A stretch of DNA of 64,000 bases, taken from NCBI GenBank assembly GCA_965644295.1, contig CBFFRP010000239.1, positions 1 through 64,000 on the forward strand, written 5' to 3'. Every line of letters starts with the position of its first letter. Position 1 is the stretch's first letter. This document shows positions 10,570 through 35,835 of the stretch, piece after piece. The position numbers and the translations under genes were made by a program. The notes below the pieces were generated by a model that saw only the letters and a program-made list of their open reading frames with translations, did no database searches and was not told the origin of the DNA. This DNA is from Paraphysomonas bandaiensis. Its lineage: Eukaryota > Protista > Chrysophyceae.

Positions 10570-11000
10570 AATTGGACTACGCAATATAGTGAAGAACTAC
10601 TGCGTTTCTTTAGATATATAGGCTGAGTTTGATTGGGGAGCCATCAGCAAAGGTGAATAGAAAATAATGTGGATTGATAAAAATGTTTCTGAGTGTGTCA
10701 CATTTTTAATGCAATGTGTAATCTTGTTGACAAGGATTTAACGTAAACCACAGTCTGGTCATCAACAACATCCTACCCTGAGCGAGTACTGTATACTAAA
10801 TATACAGCAGTGTGTGTATCATACAGTGTATCCTTGAGAACAAATAAACATGGATTAAGAGTGCATTGTTTATATCCCATCACCATGATGCCATCCTTCA
10901 GCATGAATTGCCAGTTTCTAGGCGCTTGCTTCAGACTATGCAAACTCTTCTTCTGAGCTGCTGTTGTGCCTGCTTTTGGATGAGCATTGCACACTTCCAT
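10570..11000 (-). mobile_element. Degraded Copia reverse transcriptase fragment
   Basis: KKSLHSLKQAPRNW...MGYKQCTLNPCLFVLK matches the Copia RT motif LKKSLYGLKQAPRxW...DPCLF. Confidence 0.8.
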
Positions 11001-11670: not shown

Positions 11671-12008
11671 CAAGATAGTCTACTCAGTGCGAGCACTCCT
11701 GCACACTTCACTGATCGATAAACATCCTATTCTACTGTAAAACGGCATATATCGTTCACGCCTGTAGATGCCAAGTTATAGAGGATGATAATACTATATA
11801 TCTATCTATATATACAGCGTCTAGTATGTAAGATGCAAAGGGTAAAAAGTGAAATGGAGGGATGAATTAGGACCACTCCCTTCGCTCAACACTTCGTGTA
11901 AACATTGAATATTGTAATTTTTCACCTAGATGGGTTTATTTTATCAGATATCACAGCATCGTGCTTCCAATGCTTAAGATTAATATAACAAAAATAGCTG
12001 TGCACACT

Positions 12009-15000
12009 TTACACATCTCGCAGAAACAATTTTCTTGCTTCCATATCATACATCCATTCAAGTAACTCAGAAAGCCCAATATGAATGCGGCTTGTACTCG
12101 AATGCTTACCGTACCTTCGAATATCCGCCGATGACATGAATTTTCCTGCAGTATTATCAGTCATTCGTAAAAGATGTGCTGACTGTATGAGGTCCTTAAG
12201 CACATTCCATGGGAGATGTTTCCACATTCCACCCCTATTTCTACCACCATGTAGAACTGACCCCACAAATTTCCAGTATTCAGGTTTACGGAACACATGA
12301 TCAACATGCTCTACACAAGGTGATTCTGGAGGAGCCCCGACCCAGGAAAACAACAAAATGGGGAGTTTATAACTACCCACGTTCGAATTAGGTCGCACTT
12401 TTGAGCTTCCTCCAGAGGTCGGAGTGGAAGCCAATCTGATATTAGGTGCACCAGAACATTTCTTTGGCTTCCTGAAATCTAATTCGGTATCGGCTTCGTT
12501 CTGCAAATCAAAACTACTTTCACTACACTCAGAGCTAGCCTCTTCGTCTTCATCTTCACCTTCATCACTCTCCGTTTCACTGACACATTCTGAAACTGAA
12601 CACTTACTTGACATATCTGCAACTGATATAGAGGGGTTAGAACTTAGCATGCCGACAACACTGCGAAAGGTTTGTTGCACGCCATTGACATGGTAACTGA
12701 GTTTGCAGCCAAATGCAATTCTATAAGCTCGTGGTATATCTTTTGATAAAAGTGAACCAGCGGGGGAAGACCGAATCAGATATACCAAACGGTCGTAGTC
12801 ATCTACGGAAGAATCAATCACGTTCGTAAACGTCTTTACTCCCTTTCTTCCACGCTTAGACAAATGTGAGGATGCGATTCGCTGGGCGGCATCATACGCA
12901 ATGCCTGATAGTGTTTGTTCTTGTTCCATGCAGAAGGATTTCATCGATGAAGGCATGGAGTCCAATACGGCCTGTTCGTGGACGGGATCCCCTGTACAAA
13001 AACTCAATTAACAGCAGTTAGAAAAACGAGCGTATGCGACTGATATAGTAACTATACTATAAATACTAATGTTCACAAAGGTGAGTAAAAGAGGCCTACC
13101 ATATCCAAATATCATCCCTTCTATATCGGCATTCCAACAAAATATTCCTACACTCCTGAGCTGCTGACGCAACAATGCTGAACGAATTACAATATTCATG
13201 TCACAGTCTGAAATAATATTCTCAATGGTATCACTGACACTAGAATATATATCAACAGACGGGTCCTCAAGACCGCCATTTAATGCGTTAGCTCTATTTA
13301 TGTACGTCTGGAGTTCGGATGCCATATCCTGAAGTTTTTGTGTCAACTCATCGTCCTTTCCCTGATGTCTTCGAAACGAGTTCAACGCATCAAATATTTC
13401 CTGAGCAGAGTGGTCCGATGACTCTGAAAGAAGGCGCTGACTACCTGTCGATCCGAATGAATTACTGGAAATAGTTTTTCTTCGATCGCATAGAAAACGA
13501 TATATTGGGCTCGAGCGCCAGAGCTTAATACTCAAAGAATTGTTATGTTTCACCCCTGATATAGTTGGCATAACCTGGTCGTAATCAACAACAATACCAT
13601 ATGGTATACCAAGCGCGTCAGCGATGCTAACGACTCGTGACATTTCACCTGTACCATGCATAATCGCTATCTCCCTGTTGATATACGATGACAATGGAAA
13701 GAATAGATTTCACATTTTACCATGTTGCACTCGTAGCTAGGTGTTTTAAGGCTTCGATAACACGATAGTCCGACGGTCCTTCGAAGAAAAACACCCCAGT
13801 AGCAAAAACTAGCCGAGATAGTGCAGGGTCCAATATTTTCAGAATATCACTTTCTCGAATAACCCCGTCGTGCAGTCGACATACACGGGTTACTACTTTT
13901 CCTCGTGGGTGGTCGTGCTGGCAAGAATTAGTAAAAGATTCATAGGTAACAATTCGTCTCCGGAAGCAGTAAATACAAGGTAGTGCATCCTCTGTGACAA
14001 ACTCTGTTGAATTCGTTACAACCAGAATAGACCCAGGGAAACGTTGTTGTTTATTGCTCATGCAAGACTCATGATAAAGTGACTTCGATATCCACAGTGC
14101 AAGAGCTTTCTGTTGAGGGGGATGAAGAGAGAACCCTGGTGAGTCCAATAGCACCGTGTCAGCGGAAGTCCCATGCAAAGCACAAAGAACCATCAGTAGC
14201 TCCTGGTACCCACCACCTGCGCTTTTGATGCTCAGTTGCAACCCAGGTGTAATATCAACGCCTAGTATACCACCGTGCATCAGTCTAAGAAAATGAGCAT
14301 CTTGACCCATAATACCCTTCATACCCTCCTGAATGCGCTGAATAGCAAGCATATTCGCCTGGCTGGCGCTTTTCATTAGCATTTCTACCATGCTATGTAC
14401 ATTATGTTGTGATACACTCTTGTACATTCCAGAGACTGCCGGACCACGTTCCTGGGAAAGTATACACACACTGCGAAGTAGCAGCCGACGCAACACATGT
14501 GTGATGCCTCGCACACCTGGAATTTGACACTGTATCGGCCGTGAAGTCATATGCGACTCAGTTGTCATGAGTAAACGTGTACACCAGCTCCGCACATCTG
14601 CGAGCGAGTTCGTTGCCGGGTTTCTACCAGTCAGTAGAGGGGCCGTGAACCCACAGTTAACTAAACATATTCCTCCTCCTGTAGTGCGCTGCCAATGTGT
14701 TGGGCACGTCAAATTTGCATATATATCCTGAAAATTGCATTGCCGTCAATGGACATCAATGTTTGTAAGTATGTGCATTTTACCATAGAACTGGAAGACA
14801 TAGAATTCTGTGAGGCTGCTGACTTCCGAGAAGATTTTTTAGCCTCGTGATCTATATGTGGAAAACCGTAACGAAGACCTTCTTCAATTTTACTCCAGAC
14901 CTCAAGGGAGAGTGCAGGAGCAAGTGACACCTCATTGAAAACCAGTATCTTCTGGGAATCAGTCTCGCAGAGTGCTATTCGAAGGGCACGTATCTCGTCT

Positions 15001-15761
15001 TCCAAGGTCACCGGAGGGGGAATAGTTGAAGTTATTTTGTTCGCCACACCGCTGTGAAGCCGTTTCAACACTTCGGTTGCACCATCGTCATCGCATAGAA
15101 TCTGCTGAAATACCACAGCAGCAGTATCCCTTTCTTCTGTGTGCGCATAGTAAACAGCCGATGTGTAAGGTTTCTTGGTACTATAGACGCTCAATAGCAC
15201 ACTTTCTAGTAGCTCCCAAAACAGTTTTACACGGCGTGAAGTTCCACACTGCTGACACCGCAATTTACGGAACAGTGGGCAGTCGTCGATGCCATATTCT
15301 TCTTCTGCATCTTCAGGGAATACTTCCATATTAGAAAATTTTAAAGATGTATCAATAACATCTTGTTCTTCAAGTACTGCTAATAGATCACATACTTGTG
15401 GGTCCTGCATCAGTAAAGAGAGTATCGCAGTTAACCTCCATTTAGCAAATACTTCAACTTCATCTGGAGCTAAAGAAAATCGTAGTGATGCAATACAGTG
15501 TGTCTGAGGCTCCCATATAGAGTCTACTTGTTCCCAGTGCAGCTTTACATTAACGCCAGTGCCATGAACTAGAAAAAACTCAACTAGTTTTAAAATATTA
15601 GATTTTCCCGTCCCATTAGCTGCAAAACCAGTAGTTTATATACTATAAAGGTGAATATAAGCCATACCTCCCACACATATAACGCGATTATTAATATACT
15701 CTATAATAGTGGTTTGCTCGAATCCATAGAAGCCAGAGGCAGATATGGACACTAGTTTCAT
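12009..15761 (-). CDS. OLD-family ABC-type ATPase + TOPRIM nuclease with a C-terminal LOTUS/OST-HTH-like domain; 5 exons, ~1164 aa
   Basis: Exons 15761-15668, 15619-14784, 14727-13721, 13674-13100 and 12991-12009 join in frame through GT-AG introns. Motifs: MKLVSISASGFYGF start typical of SMC/OLD ATPases, Walker A VGANGTGKSNIL, signature-like SAGGGYQELL, Walker B/D-loop VLLDSPGFSLHPPQQKAL, H-loop ILVVTNSTEF, TOPRIM LVFATGVFFFEGPSD, ALGIPYGIVVDYD, GIFCWNADIEG. Confidence 0.85.
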
Positions 15762-16171
15762 TACAACTATCTTCTCAGTGAATCCTCAGACGTGTTCTAG
15801 TTTCAGCTTAGAAGGTTATGAGGTAGATATGAATGAATCATATATATCTAATAGTGATATCAATGCCACTCAATCATACGATACTTTTCATACATTACAC
15901 AACACATCTGAATCATATCATCTCTGTATACGAAGTGAACTCGAAGTGAGGAAACACAAGGATGCGATTGGTTAATACATAAAAGTGTGTTATATAAAGT
16001 GTTTTTGTTTAGATCCTGCTGCATCTCAAGTCCAACAAAAAACCTCAACTTCAAACCTCAACAACAGCAGTAGTACGTCGTAGAAAACTGATATAAAATG
16101 CATGACAAAACCCCGATTTTTTCTCTATATTACAATTTTTATATTTCGTTGTCATGTGACAAAATCTTTGG

Positions 16172-16201: not shown

Positions 16202-16320
16202 ATGGACGGTCATACAATGCAAACCGCACCCGCTCTCGTTCCGCTCGCGGAAGTTAAGTTGCATCTGGCCCGGTTAGTAGTACGGTGGGTGACCACGTGC
16301 GAAGTCCGGGTACTGTCCGT
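16202..16320 (+). rRNA. 5S ribosomal RNA gene (single copy in window)
   Basis: ~119 nt. The 5' ATGGACGG pairs with the 3' CTGTCCGT (helix I). Conserved 5S segments CATAC, GAAGTTAAG and GGTTAGTAGTACGGTGGGTGACCAC are present, followed by a T-run terminator. Confidence 0.93.
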
Positions 16321-16332
16321 TTTTGTCTTTTT
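16320..16332 (+). terminator. Pol III T-run terminator of 5S gene
   Basis: TTTTTGTCTTTTT immediately after helix I. Confidence 0.7.
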
Positions 16333-16479: not shown

Positions 16480-17930
16480 GGGCTTATGTATTTATTTGAT
16501 GAAGCTGACCGGAGGGTGGAGTTAGTTCATCGCTATTGTAAAGAAAATCCGAAAGAATTACGCGATTACAAGAAGCCGCAGATGTGAGCTCATGATAGAA
16601 TGGAGAGGCATCGACAGTAGATGAAGCAGAAGAAATCATGAAGGAGAAGTCTAGAAATAGACCCGACTTAAATTTTTGTCGGGAAGGTGCGGAAAAGTGC
16701 ATTTCTCAGCTACCTCCGGAGGAATAAGGTGTCTCTTCAGAATGACTCCATCTCTCTTCTCTACGATAGAAGAGAAAGTAATCATGTACCTGGAGAGTGA
16801 AGTTGATGCTTCTAGTCGTGGAAAGAAGCGTATCCCTGTAAGGTACTTATTAATTGGAGTGATAAGATGATTAGCGGGTGGCTCTCCACATGATCTTGTG
16901 TGGTCTACACGCATCTACTAATATTAACTTAAATTTGCTTTTTTCGCAAATTGAGATGGGTAGTACTGGATGCGCTATTGGACTGCTTCCATGAAGAGGT
17001 TGTTCGTCTACCAACCACTGAGGACGAGAGAACCAAACTTAGTGACGGCTTGTAGGACTATCCACTTACATATAGAATATATACGTGTACATGTCCTGTA
17101 TTATATAGTCCTACAGGCTTCGCAACCAAAATGAAGATGGATGGGTGTCTCGGTGGAATTGATGGGTTACTTGTTCATATCAAACTCCCAGCTGGATTTC
17201 GAAATGCCCATCCTTATCGCTGTTACAAGTCGTTCTACGCTTTGAGTATGCAAGGAGTAGCTGACTACAACGGAGTGTTCTTGTACGTAAATGTAGGCCA
17301 TAAGGGTGCAACTGCGGATGGATGTGCCGTAAGGAAATCGCGATTCTGGCAGCGCTGCAAAGACGATGAATTCAAATTTTCTGAAGGGAACTTCTTTGTT
17401 GGAGATGCGGCATACAGCCTGATGCCTTGGTTAATGTGTCCATTTGAAGGGGCACATGGAGTCAATACCCGAGAAGATGTATTCAATCTTTATTTATCCA
17501 TAGGTCATCGAAAGAGCTTTCAAAATGATGATCAGTAGGTAATGCGTAGTAATATACGTTATAGTGTTACTTATAGTAGTACTGACTAGATGGCGCATTC
17601 TTGTAGCACCTCTAGAGCGTCTTACCATCAGAGTTATGGTGAAAATTATTAAAGTCTGTTGCTTGCTACATAATCTATGTCTGAGAGAGAGATTATCGAC
17701 AGGTAGTTGTAAATCAGGCGCATCCATTCCGCCCAGACTGTTCAAAGAATGTTGTCGTGCCAAAACTTAGATTGCATATAGATAGCTACGACCTCTGGGA
17801 GTGTCGAGCAGAATGAAAAAGCAGAAGAGTAGCATTAGGTATGAGAGATAGATTTGCTACTGATTTACATGCTACTGGTGCTGAACGTAATAAAGTTCGT
17901 GGAAGTAGAAGAGTGCTGCGTATCAAGTGT
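16480..17930 (+). mobile_element. PIF/Harbinger (DDE_Tnp_4) transposase pseudogene with spliceosomal introns
   Basis: LFRMTPSLF...GVIR*LAGGS (premature stop), GCLGGIDGLLVHI, YRCYKSFYALSMQGVAD, GHKGATADG, FFVGDAAY, FNLYLS then a frameshift to VIERAF, and an intron joining SR|WRIL. All three DDE motifs are recognisable. TIRs not identified. Confidence 0.85.
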
Positions 17931-26818: not shown

Positions 26819-28560
26819 AGCATTATTGACAAAAAGTGGGGTTTTCAAGACAGAAAACTCAATAAAACAAGAAAAAAGCACATGTCACTCGCGATATAAC
26901 GCGGTTTCTATGTTGCGTCCATATGACTGTATATGCTCTGTATACACTGTATATGGTTTGGAAATCTTAACACACGTTCTTAGCAAAAAAAACTATCAAA
27001 AAACCCTCCGAAAAATCCCACCTTTTTCGAAACCTCGTTGGAATTCCTGCTTGGTGTGGTTTGGAAATCTTAAAAGTGGTCGGAATCTTGAAGTGTGTGT
27101 GTGTTGGGTGTGTGATAGAGGAGAGGGTCGTATGTGCATATGGTAGAGGGGAATACTGCTCTGTATTTTCGCTCAGAATATTTCCCGTATTTTATTTTAA
27201 CGGTTGAGAGTGTGGGTCGTCTGAGATGTTCTAGATATCAGATCTGTCCTCCTCTCATAATTTTGATCAAAATGGGCAACAGTGCAAGTGTTACTAATAA
27301 TAAGCGTGTAGTGGTGGTAGGTGGAGGGTATGTTGGTGGAGCAGTTGCAAAAGAACTGGACAAGAAGTTCGATGTGACTGTGATTGAGCCACAGGATCAT
27401 ACCTATCACAAAATCGCAGCACTTCGAGCTGCTGTGGTTCCAGGATGGGAGAAGAGAGCTACCATTCCACTGGATAAGTTGCTGAAGAAAGGAAAGATCC
27501 TTCGTGATAAGGTGACGTCAATCGATTCAAATCAAGTCACTTTAAGCAGTGGTACCACTGTCGAGGCTGACTACATCGTTTTGGCACATGGTCAAGGCCC
27601 AATGACTTTTCCTTCGGGGCCGTTGGAAGATGTGACCGACATGGCTACATTGCAGAATGCATTACGAGAGCACCAGGCGAAGATTTCACGTTCTGAGAAC
27701 ATTGTTATTATTGGTGGGGGTCCTGTTGGAGTTGAACTTGCAGGAGAAATATGTGCACACCATCCAGGGAAAAAGGTTACCTTGGTTCATTCTCATTCAA
27801 AACTTCTCAACAACACTAACCCACCTCTGCTGGAGAAAGGAATACAAAAAGTTCAAAGTTCTTTGGAGGCTATGGGATGCACTGTACGTCTCGGTGCAAG
27901 AGTTAACTCCCTGCCTCCAACACCAGGAGGCGATTCATTTATTGAAGGGAAGAATACACTTACGCTTTCTGATGGCTCGACTATTGAGGCGGATCTGACT
28001 GTGGTAACAGTAGGCCCTGGAAAGAAGCAAGGGAATTTGGTCGATGCTGTCGATGAAAACAATAGAGTTATAGTAGATGAATATCTCAGAGTAAAAGGCT
28101 ATTCAAATGTTTTTTGCGTCGGAGATGCAAATAATCATCCGGAGACCAAACTTGCATTTACTGGAGGTATCCAAGGCCTTCATGTCGCCAAGAATATAGT
28201 TACAATGGAAAAAGGCAAGAGACCAGTCCCATATTCAGGTATGGACAAAAAGGAGCTCGGCATAATGTTGATACCATTGGGACCCAAAAAAGGAGTAGCT
28301 ATTATGGAGAAAAATGTCATGGGTGATGGCATGGCTAAGCTGATAAAAAGCAAGGGACTCTTCTCGAAGAAGCAATTTGAACAGAATAGTGCTGTGCTAC
28401 CACAGGTGTAATTGTTGTGTGTAGTGTGCAGTAGTTTTGTCACAGACTTCTTGCTACATTTCGAATCCCGATTTTGACTTTAACTTTCGAAATCGTGTCA
28501 AGATTTGTCTAATTTCTAGGATTAGATATTAGTCAGTCTGTAATTAAATATTCAATATCT
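26819..28560 (+). repeat. Left arm of ~1.73-kb inverted segmental duplication (partner 34113-35835)
   Basis: Near-identical reverse complement, including upstream region, CDS and 3' region. Confidence 0.95.
27272..28411 (+). CDS. FSP1/AIFM2 (AMID)-like FAD/NAD(P)H oxidoreductase, copy 1, intronless, 379 aa
   Basis: MGNSAS N-myristoylation motif; two Rossmann motifs VVVVGGGYVG and IVIIGGGPVGVELAGE; VDEYLRVKGYSNVFCVGD. Confidence 0.9.
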   Translation: MGNSASVTNNKRVVVVGGGYVGGAVAKELDKKFDVTVIEPQDHTYHKIAALRAAVVPGWEKRATIPLDKLLKKGKILRDKVTSIDSNQVTLSSGTTVEADYIVLAHGQGPMTFPSGPLEDVTDMATLQNALREHQAKISRSENIVIIGGGPVGVELAGEICAHHPGKKVTLVHSHSKLLNNTNPPLLEKGIQKVQSSLEAMGCTVRLGARVNSLPPTPGGDSFIEGKNTLTLSDGSTIEADLTVVTVGPGKKQGNLVDAVDENNRVIVDEYLRVKGYSNVFCVGDANNHPETKLAFTGGIQGLHVAKNIVTMEKGKRPVPYSGMDKKELGIMLIPLGPKKGVAIMEKNVMGDGMAKLIKSKGLFSKKQFEQNSAVLPQV

Positions 28561-30448: not shown

Positions 30449-33400
30449 ATGCGATCTCTGCTATATACATCCTTATATACACTGCTTCTTGCGGTAATAT
30501 CTGATAGTAAAAATATATATTTTTCTGCTATCATTGATATATACACACGAAGCGGGCATCTGTCTCAGAGGGGCCTACAAGCTCAAGCTGCGATATTAAT
30601 GGCTCTGGAAGATATTAATAATAAGACAGATGGGATATATGATGATATTCTTCCTGACTGTTTTATGAATGTTTCTTTCAAGTTTCCTTATATAGAAAAT
30701 AAAAAGTATATAGAATCTGCAGTGGCATTAAGTGGGGATGGTACTGCTATGACCGGGTGCATTGGTCCTGGGGACACAGAATACTTCTCAGGTTTGTCCC
30801 TCGAGAAGTGTAGCCTTATATGCTAATAAATGGAATTAGTTGTCAATCCTATTTTAGTGGAAGGTGGTGTATTTCATATGGGCTATCGGGCTGGCTCTGT
30901 GCGAACGCCGGAGCAGTTTCTGCGCACAAGCCCTGCAAATGAACCACAAGGTTAGGGTATATGCTATTCTTACTGTTATCACTGAAGGAATCATTACAGC
31001 AATTGCACTGGCCCGGCTAATCCGTCAGCATTTTGGATGGGAACGTATAGGTGTTATAACTTCTATGGACTCAAGCTCCATTAATTCATACGACGCGTTC
31101 AAGAGGGAAGCGCTCAATTTGGGCATCCAGGTATATGAAACTGAAATAACCAATATTTCTTGTTTTACGTATATTACAGATAATATGTGTGAGCTACTTA
31201 CCCAGTACAACTTCTAAAGAAGAATACGAACAGTCTGTGACGAAAATGGCAAAATGTGGAGCTCGAATTCTGGTGATATTAACTGCTGAGAAACATATGC
31301 AGGGTATAGTTTTGAATATTACTTTATTGTGACGGTAATTAATGTATTTTAATGCACAGGAATTGCAACAGAAGGGAATAGTATTGGTTTATTCAGATCT
31401 AACCTTCAACTACTGACGCTCCACCACTCTATGTTGGCCTCTGTAAGAGCTGACGTTGGTCTCTCGTCAAAGGATATATCACGCCTACTCAAGGGCGCAA
31501 TGTCACTTCGACCAAGCTTAGATATTTCTGCAGCACCAAGTTTTGCTTTTGTTGAACGATTTTTAGCACAGCAATCAACAGTTGGAGTGTTCAACTCGAC
31601 TTCTGGGGGGTACGTATGTCATCCTGGGTATGATGCGTCAGGATTTCCGTTATATAGATCCTACGAGGAAGAATATATCCGAAGGTCATCATCACCATGC
31701 TTGGGCTTAAATTTTAGTGCATTTAGTAAAGATGGGAGTGATATTGAAATGGACGCTTTTTATGCTTATGACGCCGTCATTTCTCTGGCACATAGCATTC
31801 ACTACTTAATGAAATCTGATAACTTTACGCTTCCGCCATCTCTGAATTCTGCTGCGTTGTTAAAATATGTTACGAAGAATTCTTTTACAGGGGCAACAGG
31901 AAGAGTAACGTACCGAGCATCTCCCATTGAGTATTCTGAGCGGGCCTACAGACTTTCTGATATGCCATTTGAGGTGGTAAATTTTAATAGTGAAGTATAT
32001 CTTCGCGATTCGTCGGGTTCAGTGTCATCAGGACTTGTCTTTGTGGGAAATGTATGGAATAATCACCCGTTCGAATCATGTGAAGCAACGTCGTCAAATT
32101 GCTACCCTATTGTTTTTAATACTGAGGACAACTCTCCACCTACAGATAGACCACACACCGAGTTTAGGGAGGTAAATCAATACGCCTATGTGGCGGTCGT
32201 GATTGTCTCTACACTCGGATTTTTGTGTTCTGTCGTCTGTGTTGGAATGCTGTATATTTATCGGTCAACTCGTCTGGTCCGTGTTGCTCAACCTATTCCT
32301 TCGTCGTTTGTTATTGCAGGCTGTATGTTGGCGTTTGCCACCGCAATCAGTATTGTAAGAGAAGTTACTGTGGAGACATGCTGTGTTAATATATGGTTAG
32401 CCCACGTGTCGTTTGTCTTTATATTTGCTCCATTGGTGGCAAAAATTTGGCGAATCCATCTTGTTCTAAACTTCACCGACAGGCATCATCAAATTTCAAC
32501 CTCTCACACTGTGGTATTTATTTTGTGCATGATATCGATATCAGTTGTAATACTGGCTGTGGAAACCAAGCTTCAACCCCAGAAGGTGTCCTACCGCACA
32601 TTATCAGATGATCAATTCAATCACGTGAAGGAGGTTGTATGTCATATATCCCCATATCAGGGAATTAGTATTGGATACGAAGCCATACTTCTACTGTATG
32701 GAATATATTTACTATATAAAACTCGGAATTTGCCTGTCGGAATTAGTGATGCTAAAGTCATTGCCTCAGGTTTACCTTTATTTGTTTATATATTTGTCTT
32801 ACGTTTATATTTGCAGCAATGTCGACTTTGATCACTTGCACATTCGTAGCAGGAGCTTTAGTTTTATTTTTTGAAGGCATTGACTATACTAGTTTTGTTG
32901 TAATAGTAGCAGTTGTATTCATACTGGCTACTTTCCGAGTGATGACAGTGTTGTTTTTTACGATGGGGGGGCTACTTCTTAAGGTATTTTTTCTATTAGT
33001 TGTGGTTTGCAGCGATTGATAGTCATGTTTTATTCAGGGTTATGATTTGGATAGAAAATTTCAATTGACCCGGGTGTCTGATGAGAAGTCTGTATCCGAT
33101 AAGTATGTACACCTTTTTGACACTGCACATAAGAATGCAATAACATGTTGGTTTTGTGCAGACTTCTTAGGCTGGTACATGTGGTCGTGCCTCTAATGAG
33201 ACGGAAGCGTTTTGTCTTGGACGGCGATAGTGCACGAGTGAAAAATACTGTTATGAGTTCATCGGAAGCACAAATCCTTCCCGGTGATGAGCTCATGGCC
33301 ATCCAAGCTGAGATAGATAGGTGAGATTTCTATCGTGCTACTCTGTTGTGTAAAAATTGGTAAAGGTTGAATGAGCGGTTGGATCTACTTGCCAATAGGG

Positions 33401-34112: not shown

Positions 34113-35835
34113 AGACATTGAATATTTAATTACAGACTGACTAATATCTAATCCTAGAAATTAGACAAATCTTGACACGATTTCGAAAGTTAAAATCAAA
34201 ATCGGGATTCGAAATGTAGCAAGAAGTCTGTGACAAAACTACTGCACACTACACACAACAATTACACCTGTGGTAGCACAGCACTATTCTGTTCAAATTG
34301 CTTCTTCGAGAAGAGTCCCTTGCTTTTTATCAGCTTAGCCATGCCATCACCCATGACATTTTTCTCCATAATAGCTACTCCTTTTTTGGGTCCCAATGGT
34401 ATCAACATTATGCCGAGCTCCTTTTTGTCCATACCTGAATATGGGACTGGTCTCTTGCCTTTTTCCATTGTAACTATATTCTTGGCGACATGAAGGCCTT
34501 GGATACCTCCAGTAAATGCGAGTTTGGTCTCCGGATGATTATTTGCATCTCCGACGCAAAAAACATTTGAATAGCCTTTTACTCTGAGATATTCATCTAC
34601 TATAACTCTATTGTTTTCATCGACAGCATCGACCAAATTCCCTTGCTTCTTTCCAGGGCCTACTGTTACCACAGTCAGATCCGCCTCAATAGTCGAGCCA
34701 TCAGAAAGCGTAAGTGTATTCTTCCCTTCAATAAATGAATCGCCTCCTGGTGTTGGAGGCAGGGAGTTAACTCTTGCACCGAGACGTACAGTGCATCCCA
34801 TAGCCTCCAAAGAACTTTGAACTTTTTGTATTCCTTTCTCCAGCAGAGGTGGGTTAGTGTTGTTGAGAAGTTTTGAATGAGAATGAACCAAGGTAACCTT
34901 TTTCCCTGGATGGTGTGCACATATTTCTCCTGCAAGTTCAACTCCAACAGGACCCCCACCAATAATAACAATGTTCTCAGAACGTGAAATCTTCGCCTGG
35001 TGCTCTCGTAATGCATTCTGCAATGTAGCCATGTCGGTCACATCTTCCAACGGCCCCGAAGGAAAAGTCATTGGGCCTTGACCATGTGCCAAAACGATGT
35101 AGTCAGCCTCGACAGTGGTACCACTGCTTAAAGTGACTTGATTCGAATCGATTGATGTCACCTTATCACGAAGGATCTTTCCTTTCTTCAGCAACTTATC
35201 CAGTGGAATGGTAGCTCTCTTCTCCCATCCTGGAACCACAGCAGCTCGAAGTGCTGCGATTTTGTGATAGGTATGATCCTGTGGCTCAATCACAGTCACA
35301 TCGAACTTCTTGTCCAGTTCTTTTGCAACTGCTCCACCAACATACCCTCCACCTACCACCACTACACGCTTATTATTAGTAACACTTGCACTGTTGCCCA
35401 TTTTGATCAAAATTATGAGAGGAGGACAGATCTGATATCTAGAACATCTCAGACGACCCACACTCTCAACCGTTAAAATAAAATACGGGAAATATTCTGA
35501 GCGAAAATACAGAGCAGTATTCCCCTCTACCATATGCACATACGCCCCCTCTCCTCTATACACACACCCCAACACACACACACTTCAAGATTCCGACCAC
35601 CAAGCAGGAATTCCAACGAGGTTTCGAAAAAGGTGGGATTTTTCGGAGTTTTTTTTGATAGTTTTTTTTGCTAAGAACGTGTGTTAAGATTTCCAAACCA
35701 TATACAGTGTATACAGAGCATATACAGTGATATGGACGCAACATAGACACCGCGTCATATCGCGAGTGACATGTGCTTTTTTCTTGTTTTATTGAGATTT
35801 CTGTCTTGAAAACCCCACTTTTTGTCAATAATGCT
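34113..35835 (-). repeat. Right arm of inverted segmental duplication
   Basis: Reverse complement of 26819-28560 with few substitutions and a small upstream indel. Confidence 0.95.
34262..35401 (-). CDS. FSP1/AIFM2-like oxidoreductase, copy 2 (same protein as copy 1)
   Basis: Translation from MGNSAS is identical to 27272-28411. Confidence 0.9.
   Translation of the reverse strand: MGNSASVTNNKRVVVVGGGYVGGAVAKELDKKFDVTVIEPQDHTYHKIAALRAAVVPGWEKRATIPLDKLLKKGKILRDKVTSIDSNQVTLSSGTTVEADYIVLAHGQGPMTFPSGPLEDVTDMATLQNALREHQAKISRSENIVIIGGGPVGVELAGEICAHHPGKKVTLVHSHSKLLNNTNPPLLEKGIQKVQSSLEAMGCTVRLGARVNSLPPTPGGDSFIEGKNTLTLSDGSTIEADLTVVTVGPGKKQGNLVDAVDENNRVIVDEYLRVKGYSNVFCVGDANNHPETKLAFTGGIQGLHVAKNIVTMEKGKRPVPYSGMDKKELGIMLIPLGPKKGVAIMEKNVMGDGMAKLIKSKGLFSKKQFEQNSAVLPQV

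What the first reader, a model, noticed from the sequence alone, without database searches (positions are those of the whole stretch)
12009..15761. Intact, spliced eukaryotic gene for an OLD/GajA-type ATPase-TOPRIM nuclease
Seen in sequence: four ORF-track fragments plus a small first exon join through four GT-AG introns into a ~1164-aa protein. It has an N-terminal ABC/SMC-type ATPase (GANGTGKS; SAGGGYQE; LLDSPGFSLHP) followed by TOPRIM motifs (FFEGPSD; IVVDYD; DIEG). Established knowledge: this ATPase-TOPRIM order defines OLD-family nucleases (phage P2 Old, Gabija GajA; PARIS splits similar domains into AriA/AriB), which act mainly in prokaryotic anti-phage defence. Inference: a protist has acquired and domesticated such a protein, plausibly for defence against viruses or mobile elements. 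No GajB/UvrD-like helicase partner gene is visible nearby.
Basis: partly seen in the sequence, partly recalled or inferred. Interest (0 to 1): 0.92.

Follow-up and report, generated by a model that had tools for sequence, protein, structure and literature searches.

The report
Protist OLD nuclease with disabled ATPase
A marine protist expresses a spliced gene for an OLD-type nuclease, a kind known from bacterial virus defence and recently also from aquatic eukaryotes, but this version and about a dozen relatives have lost the two ATP-splitting residues and gained a small, probably RNA-binding domain, which suggests a differently controlled enzyme.

Summary
Five exons give a 1164-aa protein, and one RNA contig of a close strain skips all four introns. 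The gene is single-copy and under purifying selection. It is an OLD-family ABC-ATPase/TOPRIM protein: the family profile's best PDB hits are T. scotoductus OLD and GajA, and an ortholog's model matches OLD/GajA/Eco8. Eukaryotic OLD-like genes are already described (bioRxiv 10.64898/2026.08.18.745644, citing Krishnan 2020), so the headline is not new. What I found undescribed: the gene belongs to a well-supported clade (100/100) in which Walker B Glu is Ser and the H-loop His is Asn in all 12 sequences read. Walker A, Q-loop, signature and all TOPRIM metal ligands are intact. A winged-helix domain, best matching LOTUS (Z 8.2-8.4, suggestive only), is inserted in the TOPRIM helical subdomain. 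Orthologs also carry an SH3b-like insert that this gene has lost. Likely mechanism: an ATP-binding, non-hydrolysing switch gating a nuclease that the winged helix steers to RNA or structured nucleic acid. Defence and housekeeping roles are about equally open. The scan noted both features before only on this same window.

The parts
15668..15761 (-). Exon 1 (start ATG at 15761; first strands of the ABC ATPase up to the start of Walker A)
   Evidence: 52-77% identical N-termini in orthologs
15620..15667 (-). Intron 1, 48 nt GT..AG, splits Walker A; same position in ortholog loci L002, L003, L008, L010; absent in L009 and L023
14784..15619 (-). Exon 2: Walker A (K37 intact) and N-terminal ATPase/helical insert
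14728..14783 (-). Intron 2, 56 nt GT..AG
   Evidence: skipped in X1 and X4
13721..14727 (-). Exon 3: Q-loop (Q402, ~14455), signature SAGGG (14223-14209), degenerate Walker B LLDSP (14151-14137; S506 for Glu), degenerate H-loop VTNS (14019-14008; N549 for His), first TOPRIM motif EG..D (13788-13768; E626, D630)
13894..13941 (-). Site where orthologs carry a ~70-110 aa SH3b-like insert; only a ~16-residue remnant here
   Evidence: alignment; Pfam SH3_3 E 0.003-0.07 in orthologs; structural match to SH3b domains Z 8.1-8.3, rmsd 2.0-2.4
13675..13720 (-). Intron 3, 46 nt GT..AG
   Evidence: skipped in X1
13100..13674 (-). Exon 4: TOPRIM DxD (D676, D678; 13589-13578), helical insert, metal-B motif DIEG (E831; 13130-13116)
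   Evidence: Pfam OLD-like_TOPRIM E 0.023, PADLOC Old E 0.018
12992..13099 (-). Intron 4, 108 nt GT..AG
   Evidence: skipped in X1 and X4
12009..12991 (-). Exon 5: winged-helix domain, acidic low-complexity linker, terminal OLD helices, stop TAA
12621..12803 (-). Winged-helix domain (residues ~901-961), LOTUS/OST-HTH-like, conserved in all 6 clade sequences that reach it, not in other OLD-like hits
   Evidence: model pLDDT 74-90 per 10-residue block; Oskar/Tejas/TDRD5/TDRD7 LOTUS top-ranked, Z 7.3-8.4; Atlas OST-HTH 0.86; no Pfam hit
12207..12257 (-). LH..G..W motif that closes the TOPRIM helical subdomain in other eukaryotic OLD-like proteins; shows that the winged helix is an insertion, not a tail
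   Evidence: TsOLD, Eco8, GajA and BpOLD alignments run to model residue 1200
11923..15962 (-). Extent of the spliced transcript contig (5' leader at least 200 nt, short 3' UTR)
   Evidence: table 8

Best explanation
A domesticated, vertically inherited eukaryotic OLD-family nuclease whose ABC domain has become an ATP-binding, essentially non-hydrolysing switch. SHOWN: gene structure, expression, OLD architecture, clade-wide Glu-to-Ser and His-to-Asn changes with intact Walker A/Q-loop/signature, intact TOPRIM metal ligands, inserted winged helix. INFERRED: like other OLDs it dimerises through the ABC domains; bound ATP holds the TOPRIM sites closed (as nucleotides inhibit GajA); a fall in nucleotide level or binding of a trigger releases them; the LOTUS-like domain beside the active site steers the two-metal nuclease to RNA or structured nucleic acid (tRNA cleavage is the in vivo activity reported for P2 Old and PARIS). 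The most likely role is surveillance against viruses or mobile elements, only narrowly ahead of a housekeeping role.
For: Splicing and expression in two organism labels plus marine poly(A) metatranscriptome pieces. pN/pS 0.29, p 1.7e-4 on 39 codons. Profile hits TsOLD E 8e-22, GajA E 6e-14. The ortholog model's four Foldseek hits under 0.001 are GajA, TsOLD and two Eco8 chains; its C-half matches the BpOLD TOPRIM region Z 9.5, rmsd 3.5; all 10 Atlas rows are AAA_15/21 ATPase clusters, nine with OLD-like TOPRIM listed. D-S-P and T-N-S in the window, 10 database proteins and L023, against D-E-P and T/S-H-S in the other OLD-like hits. GajA nuclease is inhibited by nucleotides, and its H320A mutant stays inhibited (PMC10568477; PMC10822852). 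P2 Old is a tRNase (10.64898/2026.07.10.737580). LOTUS is fused to the eukaryotic defence ATPase-DNase Tiamat in aquatic taxa (10.64898/2026.09.30.754977).
Against: No biochemical data. GajA H320A abolishes phage defence and ATPase-domain mutants abolish P2 Old tRNA cleavage, so a hydrolysis-dead OLD may not work as a canonical defence enzyme. Single copy and 45-65% identity across lineages look more like housekeeping than arms race. The LOTUS call is near the noise range (other winged helices reach Z 7.7; no Pfam hit; a second Atlas query was blank). The catalytic basic residue of OLDs could not be assigned.
Confidence: 0.45

Rival explanations
1. Same enzyme anatomy, but fully domesticated for housekeeping: RNA processing or turnover (TOPRIM RNase M5-like, LOTUS-guided) or chromatin/DNA maintenance, as for archaeal Cran1.
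For: Single copy; expressed in culture transcriptomes; purifying selection; ancient shared intron and conserved synteny between L002 and L008; no tandem expansion, unlike the two canonical OLD-like copies on L004; loss of residues that defence needs in GajA; Cran1 precedent (PMC12796447).
Against: Patchy: only about 13 clusters among 1.84 billion proteins; domain gain and loss within the clade (SH3b present or absent) and 19 amino-acid differences between two 98.5% identical strains show some lability; every characterised bacterial OLD class is a defence protein.
Confidence: 0.32
2. An ordinary eukaryotic class-1-like OLD DNase with a working ATPase; the substitutions are tolerated and the winged helix is a generic DNA-binding add-on.
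For: Walker A, Q-loop, signature and D-loop His are intact; non-LOTUS winged helices score Z 6-7.7; OLD TOPRIM domains cut DNA in vitro (PMC6755086).
Against: The Walker B Glu and the H-loop His are the catalytic dyad of ABC ATPases (established knowledge); both are replaced together in every clade member and in none of the other hits.
Confidence: 0.12
3. The ABC domain is only a structural dimerisation scaffold and nucleotide has no regulatory role; the nuclease is controlled by partner proteins via the winged helix and SH3b.
For: ATP has negligible effect on TsOLD and BpOLD cleavage; orthologs carry a protein-interaction-type SH3b fold.
Against: Walker A Lys, Q-loop Gln and signature glycines are kept across the clade, which implies selection for nucleotide binding.
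Confidence: 0.09
4. Artefact: bacterial contamination, pseudogene or wrong gene model.
For: Per-exon Pfam/PADLOC hits are weak.
Against: Four spliceosomal introns removed in RNA; flanked by CEP104 and 5S rRNA; GC3 0.38, like neighbours at 0.33-0.46; no close prokaryotic, viral, phage or plasmid match.
Confidence: 0.02

Closest known systems
Eukaryotic OLD-like proteins (Maaroufi 2026, bioRxiv 10.64898/2026.08.18.745644; Krishnan et al. 2020 as cited there)
   Same: ABC-ATPase + TOPRIM in one chain, aquatic eukaryote host, no GajB, expressed.
   Different: Those are 577-844 aa with conserved Walker B; their SAR copies are single and intronless; the text does not mention LOTUS/OST-HTH. This gene is 1164 aa, has four introns, a degenerate Walker B and H-loop, and a winged-helix insertion. 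The preprint's supplement was not held, so overlap with its tables is untested.
Class 1 OLD (T. scotoductus OLD 6P74, phage P2 Old)
   Same: Stand-alone gene; best PDB sequence-profile match (E 8e-22); whole-length structural match of the ortholog model.
   Different: Class 1 OLDs hydrolyse ATP, are about 530-590 aa and have no winged-helix or SH3b inserts.
Gabija GajA (class 2) and retron Eco8 OLD (class 3)
   Same: Same fold and metal ligands; GajA gives the precedent for nucleotide binding gating the nuclease.
   Different: No GajB helicase or retron RT/ncRNA nearby; GajA keeps its H-loop His, which defence needs.
PARIS AriA/AriB
   Same: ABC ATPase sensor plus TOPRIM nuclease; AriA matched structurally (Z 10.5).
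   Different: Split genes, released-effector mechanism; here a single chain.
LOTUS-Tiamat fusions (bioRxiv 10.64898/2026.09.30.754977)
   Same: Prokaryote-type defence ATPase-nuclease that gained LOTUS domains in aquatic eukaryotes.
   Different: Unrelated folds (GHL ATPase, PD-(D/E)xK nuclease); LOTUS is N-terminal there and inserted in the TOPRIM helical subdomain here.
Cran1 (archaeal OLD, PMC12796447)
   Same: OLD-family protein with a possible non-defence role.
   Different: Active ATPase; archaeal; no evidence of orthology.

Membership tests
OLD family | N-terminal ABC/SMC-type ATPase fold | tested here: met
   Ortholog model vs Rad50/SMC/AriA heads Z 10-11.5; motifs in order
OLD family | C-terminal OLD-type TOPRIM domain in the same chain | tested here: met
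   Orthologs pass Pfam PF20469 cut-off, E about 1e-7; window exon 4 E 0.023; BpOLD C-terminal region Z 9.5
OLD family | Metal A (Glu, DxD) and metal B (Glu+4 acid, x-x-Glu) ligands | tested here: met
   E626, D630, D676, D678, E831 conserved in the clade, compared with BpOLD ligands
OLD family | Catalytic basic residue (BpOLD K562 / TsOLD R487) | tested here: inconclusive
   Other eukaryotic hits have Lys before the LH motif, the clade does not; no residue-level superposition available
OLD family | Catalytically complete ATPase (Walker B Glu, H-loop His) | tested here: not met
   Ser and Asn in all 12 clade sequences read; so a variant, not a canonical member
OLD family | Metal-dependent nuclease activity and anti-viral phenotype | not testable with these tools
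   needs biochemistry and infection assays
Gabija (class 2) | Adjacent GajB/UvrD helicase | tested here: not met
   No helicase in window; genome's UvrD hits on contigs C1 and C162
Retron OLD (class 3) | Adjacent retron RT and ncRNA | tested here: not met
   Rfam finds only 5S rRNA; the only RT nearby is a 75-aa copia-type remnant
PARIS (class 4) | ATPase and TOPRIM on separate genes | tested here: not met
   One spliced transcript
LOTUS/OST-HTH domain | Winged-helix fold of about 65-75 aa | tested here: met
   Model residues 62-125 confident; Z 8.2-8.4 to Oskar LOTUS
LOTUS/OST-HTH domain | Sequence match to PF12872 or clear gap over other winged helices | tested here: inconclusive
   No Pfam hit; Foldseek E over 1 though LOTUS fills ranks 1-5; Atlas 0.86, blank for P0003; hhalign to a host LOTUS protein E 9e-4, prob 23; STIV F93 ties at Z 7.7
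Housekeeping SMC/Rad50/RecF | Long coiled coil, no TOPRIM | tested here: not met
   Only the ATPase head matches them; TOPRIM present

The most novel reading that the evidence does not exclude
A distinct eukaryotic class of OLD proteins: a hydrolysis-dead ABC nucleotide sensor coupled to a LOTUS-guided TOPRIM ribonuclease that cuts tRNA or viral/transposon RNA when ATP falls or a viral trigger binds, that is, a one-gene abortive antiviral system of stramenopile-type plankton, paralleling LOTUS gain in eukaryotic Tiamat.
Probability: 0.2. Interest if true: 0.85.

Novelty: new variant of a known kind. Interest (0 to 1): 0.55.

Why it matters
Eukaryotic OLD-like genes are known only from sequence surveys, and none has a tested function. 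This clade is a natural experiment on an open question of the OLD field, namely whether the ABC domain needs to hydrolyse ATP or only to bind it. It is also a second case, after Tiamat, of a bacterial-type defence ATPase-nuclease gaining a LOTUS-like domain in aquatic eukaryotes. The gene is single-copy, expressed and RNA-validated, in an organism that appears to be in culture, so it is directly testable.

Tried and rejected
Following the operators' note, the joined spliced protein was not searched or folded; exons were searched by reference and the natural ortholog P0001 was folded instead. The join was used only inside scripts to check frame, residue numbers and codon changes. Direct PDB search with exon 3 was blank. 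Scans of viral, metagenome (twice) and prokaryotic genome contigs, phages and plasmids found no relative; the metagenome blanks are weak evidence because a JGI ortholog contig (L008) exists. The profile search for full-length kin drifted into generic ABC ATPases. The 18S family search failed twice; a partial 18S was read next to a 5.8S hit but no tool could name it. Krishnan 2020 was not held. Promoter scan is not meaningful for a eukaryote. Flanks show no synteny with ortholog loci, and the 5S rRNA neighbour is not conserved. Rejected: contamination, pseudogene, SMC/Rad50 housekeeping protein, Gabija, retron or PARIS membership, recent direct transfer from a bacterium.

Full report
Observation. 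The minus strand carries five exons (15761-15668, 15619-14784, 14727-13721, 13674-13100, 12991-12009) that add up to 1164 codons and a stop, with four short AT-rich GT..AG introns. One 3806-nt contig from run X1, a strain about 98.5% identical, skips exactly these four introns and covers 11923-15962; run X4 skips introns 2 and 4; run X14 is colinear DNA; a marine poly(A) metatranscriptome covers five pieces. The 40 listed strain differences fall in 39 codons, 20 synonymous and 19 not, pN/pS 0.29, p 1.7e-4 (the list was cut at 40 of 76, so this is a partial count). The gene is single-copy, lies between CEP104 and a 5S rRNA gene and has the same GC3 as its neighbours. It is a real, expressed nuclear gene. 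The joined protein was not used in any search.

Host. The assembly is 62.6 Mb in 669 contigs. A partial 18S gene looks to me like an ochrophyte stramenopile, chrysophyte-like rather than diatom; this rests on memory only, and earlier scan notes call the genome diatom-like. Marine origin is supported and the Tara contig of ortholog P0052.

Family. Per-exon library hits are weak: Pfam OLD-like_TOPRIM E 0.023, PADLOC Old E 0.018. Exon 3 finds 43 proteins among 1.84 billion. The best full-length ones, P0001, P0003 and P0051 (1229-1309 aa, mostly 40-60% identical exon by exon), align over the gene; P0001 and P0003 pass the PF20469 cut-off. A profile of 27 relatives hits T. scotoductus OLD first (E 8e-22), then GajA. 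An AlphaFold2 model of P0001 (pLDDT 69.5, pTM 0.63) has GajA, TsOLD and retron Eco8 OLD as its only Foldseek hits under E 0.001. By VIA its N-half matches Rad50/SMC/AriA heads (Z 10-11.5), its C-half the BpOLD TOPRIM region (Z 9.5, rmsd 3.5), and the chains aligned over both halves are OLDs. The Atlas rows are AAA_15/21 ATPase clusters, nine of ten with OLD-like TOPRIM listed, TM by row up to 0.79.

Prior art. A preprint of August 2026 reports old-like genes in SAR, Filasterea, chytrids and aquatic invertebrates, 577-844 aa, with conserved Walker motifs, no GajB, and single intronless copies in SAR; it cites Krishnan 2020 for Capsaspora and Crassostrea (10.64898/2026.08.18.745644). A eukaryotic OLD is therefore known in kind.

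What differs. First, the ATPase. The window and every close relative that reaches the motifs (P0001-P0007, P0051-P0053, locus L023) read D-S-P at Walker B and T-N-S at the H-loop, whereas the other hits read D-E-P and T/S-H-S (the two odd rows are pattern slips, as searches show). Walker A Lys, Q-loop Gln, signature glycines and D-loop His are kept. From established ABC enzymology, loss of both the Glu and the His should stop or strongly slow hydrolysis and leave binding. The TOPRIM ligands E626, D630, D676, D678 and E831 match the BpOLD two-metal set (PMC6755086). The eight clade rows in the tree form one side of a long branch, 100/100; its grouping with other eukaryote-like OLDs is weak (83/85). 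One related hit is from the sponge Oscarella. Intron 1 sits at the same place in four ortholog loci with GC from 39 to 52%, which points to old vertical descent. No close relative was found in prokaryotic genomes, viral contigs, phages or plasmids.

Second, a winged helix at residues about 901-961. It is conserved in all six clade sequences that reach it and absent from the other hits. It folds confidently, and LOTUS domains of Oskar, Tejas, TDRD5 and TDRD7 rank first by VIA (Z 7.3-8.4) and Foldseek; the Atlas gives OST-HTH at 0.86. But a viral winged helix ties at Z 7.7, Pfam is blank and a second Atlas query gave nothing. Winged helix is secure; LOTUS is about 60-65% likely in my judgement. 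The closing LH..G..W motif of eukaryotic OLDs lies after it, so it is inserted in the helical subdomain next to the active site. I found no paper joining OST-HTH and TOPRIM in this way. LOTUS domains are fused to a third of eukaryotic Tiamat defence proteins, in aquatic taxa (10.64898/2026.09.30.754977).

Third, orthologs have an SH3b-like insert between ATPase and TOPRIM that this gene has lost; RNA and DNA runs agree on the loss.

Mechanism. The simplest reading is a dimeric nuclease whose ABC domains bind ATP without turning it over and so act as a latch. GajA is inhibited by nucleotides, and its H320A mutant remains inhibited (PMC10568477; PMC10822852). P2 Old cuts tRNA in vivo once its oligomer opens (10.64898/2026.07.10.737580). 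A LOTUS-like domain would favour RNA or structured substrates. Against a defence role: GajA H320A loses phage defence, ATPase mutants of Old lose tRNA cleavage, and a conserved single-copy gene resembles housekeeping, for which archaeal Cran1 is a precedent (PMC12796447). I give 0.45 to nucleotide-gated surveillance nuclease, 0.32 to housekeeping, 0.12 to a canonical OLD DNase, 0.09 to a scaffold-only ATPase and 0.02 to artefact.

Verdict. Real and well supported, an OLD-family variant rather than a canonical member of any class. The headline is known; the hydrolysis-dead ATPase with a winged-helix insertion, conserved across a protist clade, appears undescribed. New variant of a known kind, interest 0.55.

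Noticed in passing
window 16202-16321 (+): A complete stand-alone 5S rRNA gene with a T-run terminator, 440 nt upstream of the OLD start codon on the opposite strand; not conserved beside orthologs.
   Followed up: partly
window 17131-17770 (+): Broken PIF/Harbinger-type transposase remnant (DDE_Tnp_4, E 2e-15).
   Followed up: partly
window 10773-11000 (-): Short copia-type reverse transcriptase remnant (RVT_2, E 0.001) between CEP104 and the OLD gene.
   Followed up: partly
window 27134-28411 (+) and 34262-35581 (-): Near-identical inverted copies of an FSP1/AIF-like oxidoreductase flanking a class C GPCR-like gene at 31431-32831.
   Followed up: no
window 37958-59358 (-): Run of long, mostly unannotated ORFs with ankyrin and ARM-like repeats, including a 2320-aa ORF.
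   Followed up: no
L005-L007 (P0025): A 1373-aa OLD-like protein annotated as from the archaeal MAG Ca. Sysuiplasma superficiale lies on gene-sparse contigs that look eukaryotic; possible mis-binning that could fake an archaeal origin in trees.
   Followed up: no
L004:1708-11731: Two tandem, catalytically canonical OLD-like genes on a 601-kb gene-sparse contig, in line with expansions in animals.
   Followed up: no
P0023: 1778-aa OLD-like protein with a roughly 700-aa insertion between ATPase and TOPRIM that ends in a PH-like-looking segment (by eye only).
   Followed up: no
G000 contigs C68, C188, C653, C420, C525, C438: 5.8S rRNA hits fall into four score classes: divergent copies or more than one eukaryote in the assembly.
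   Followed up: no
L024:1688-2242 (G000 C80): Small host protein with two OST-HTH/LOTUS repeats (E 2e-8).
   Followed up: partly
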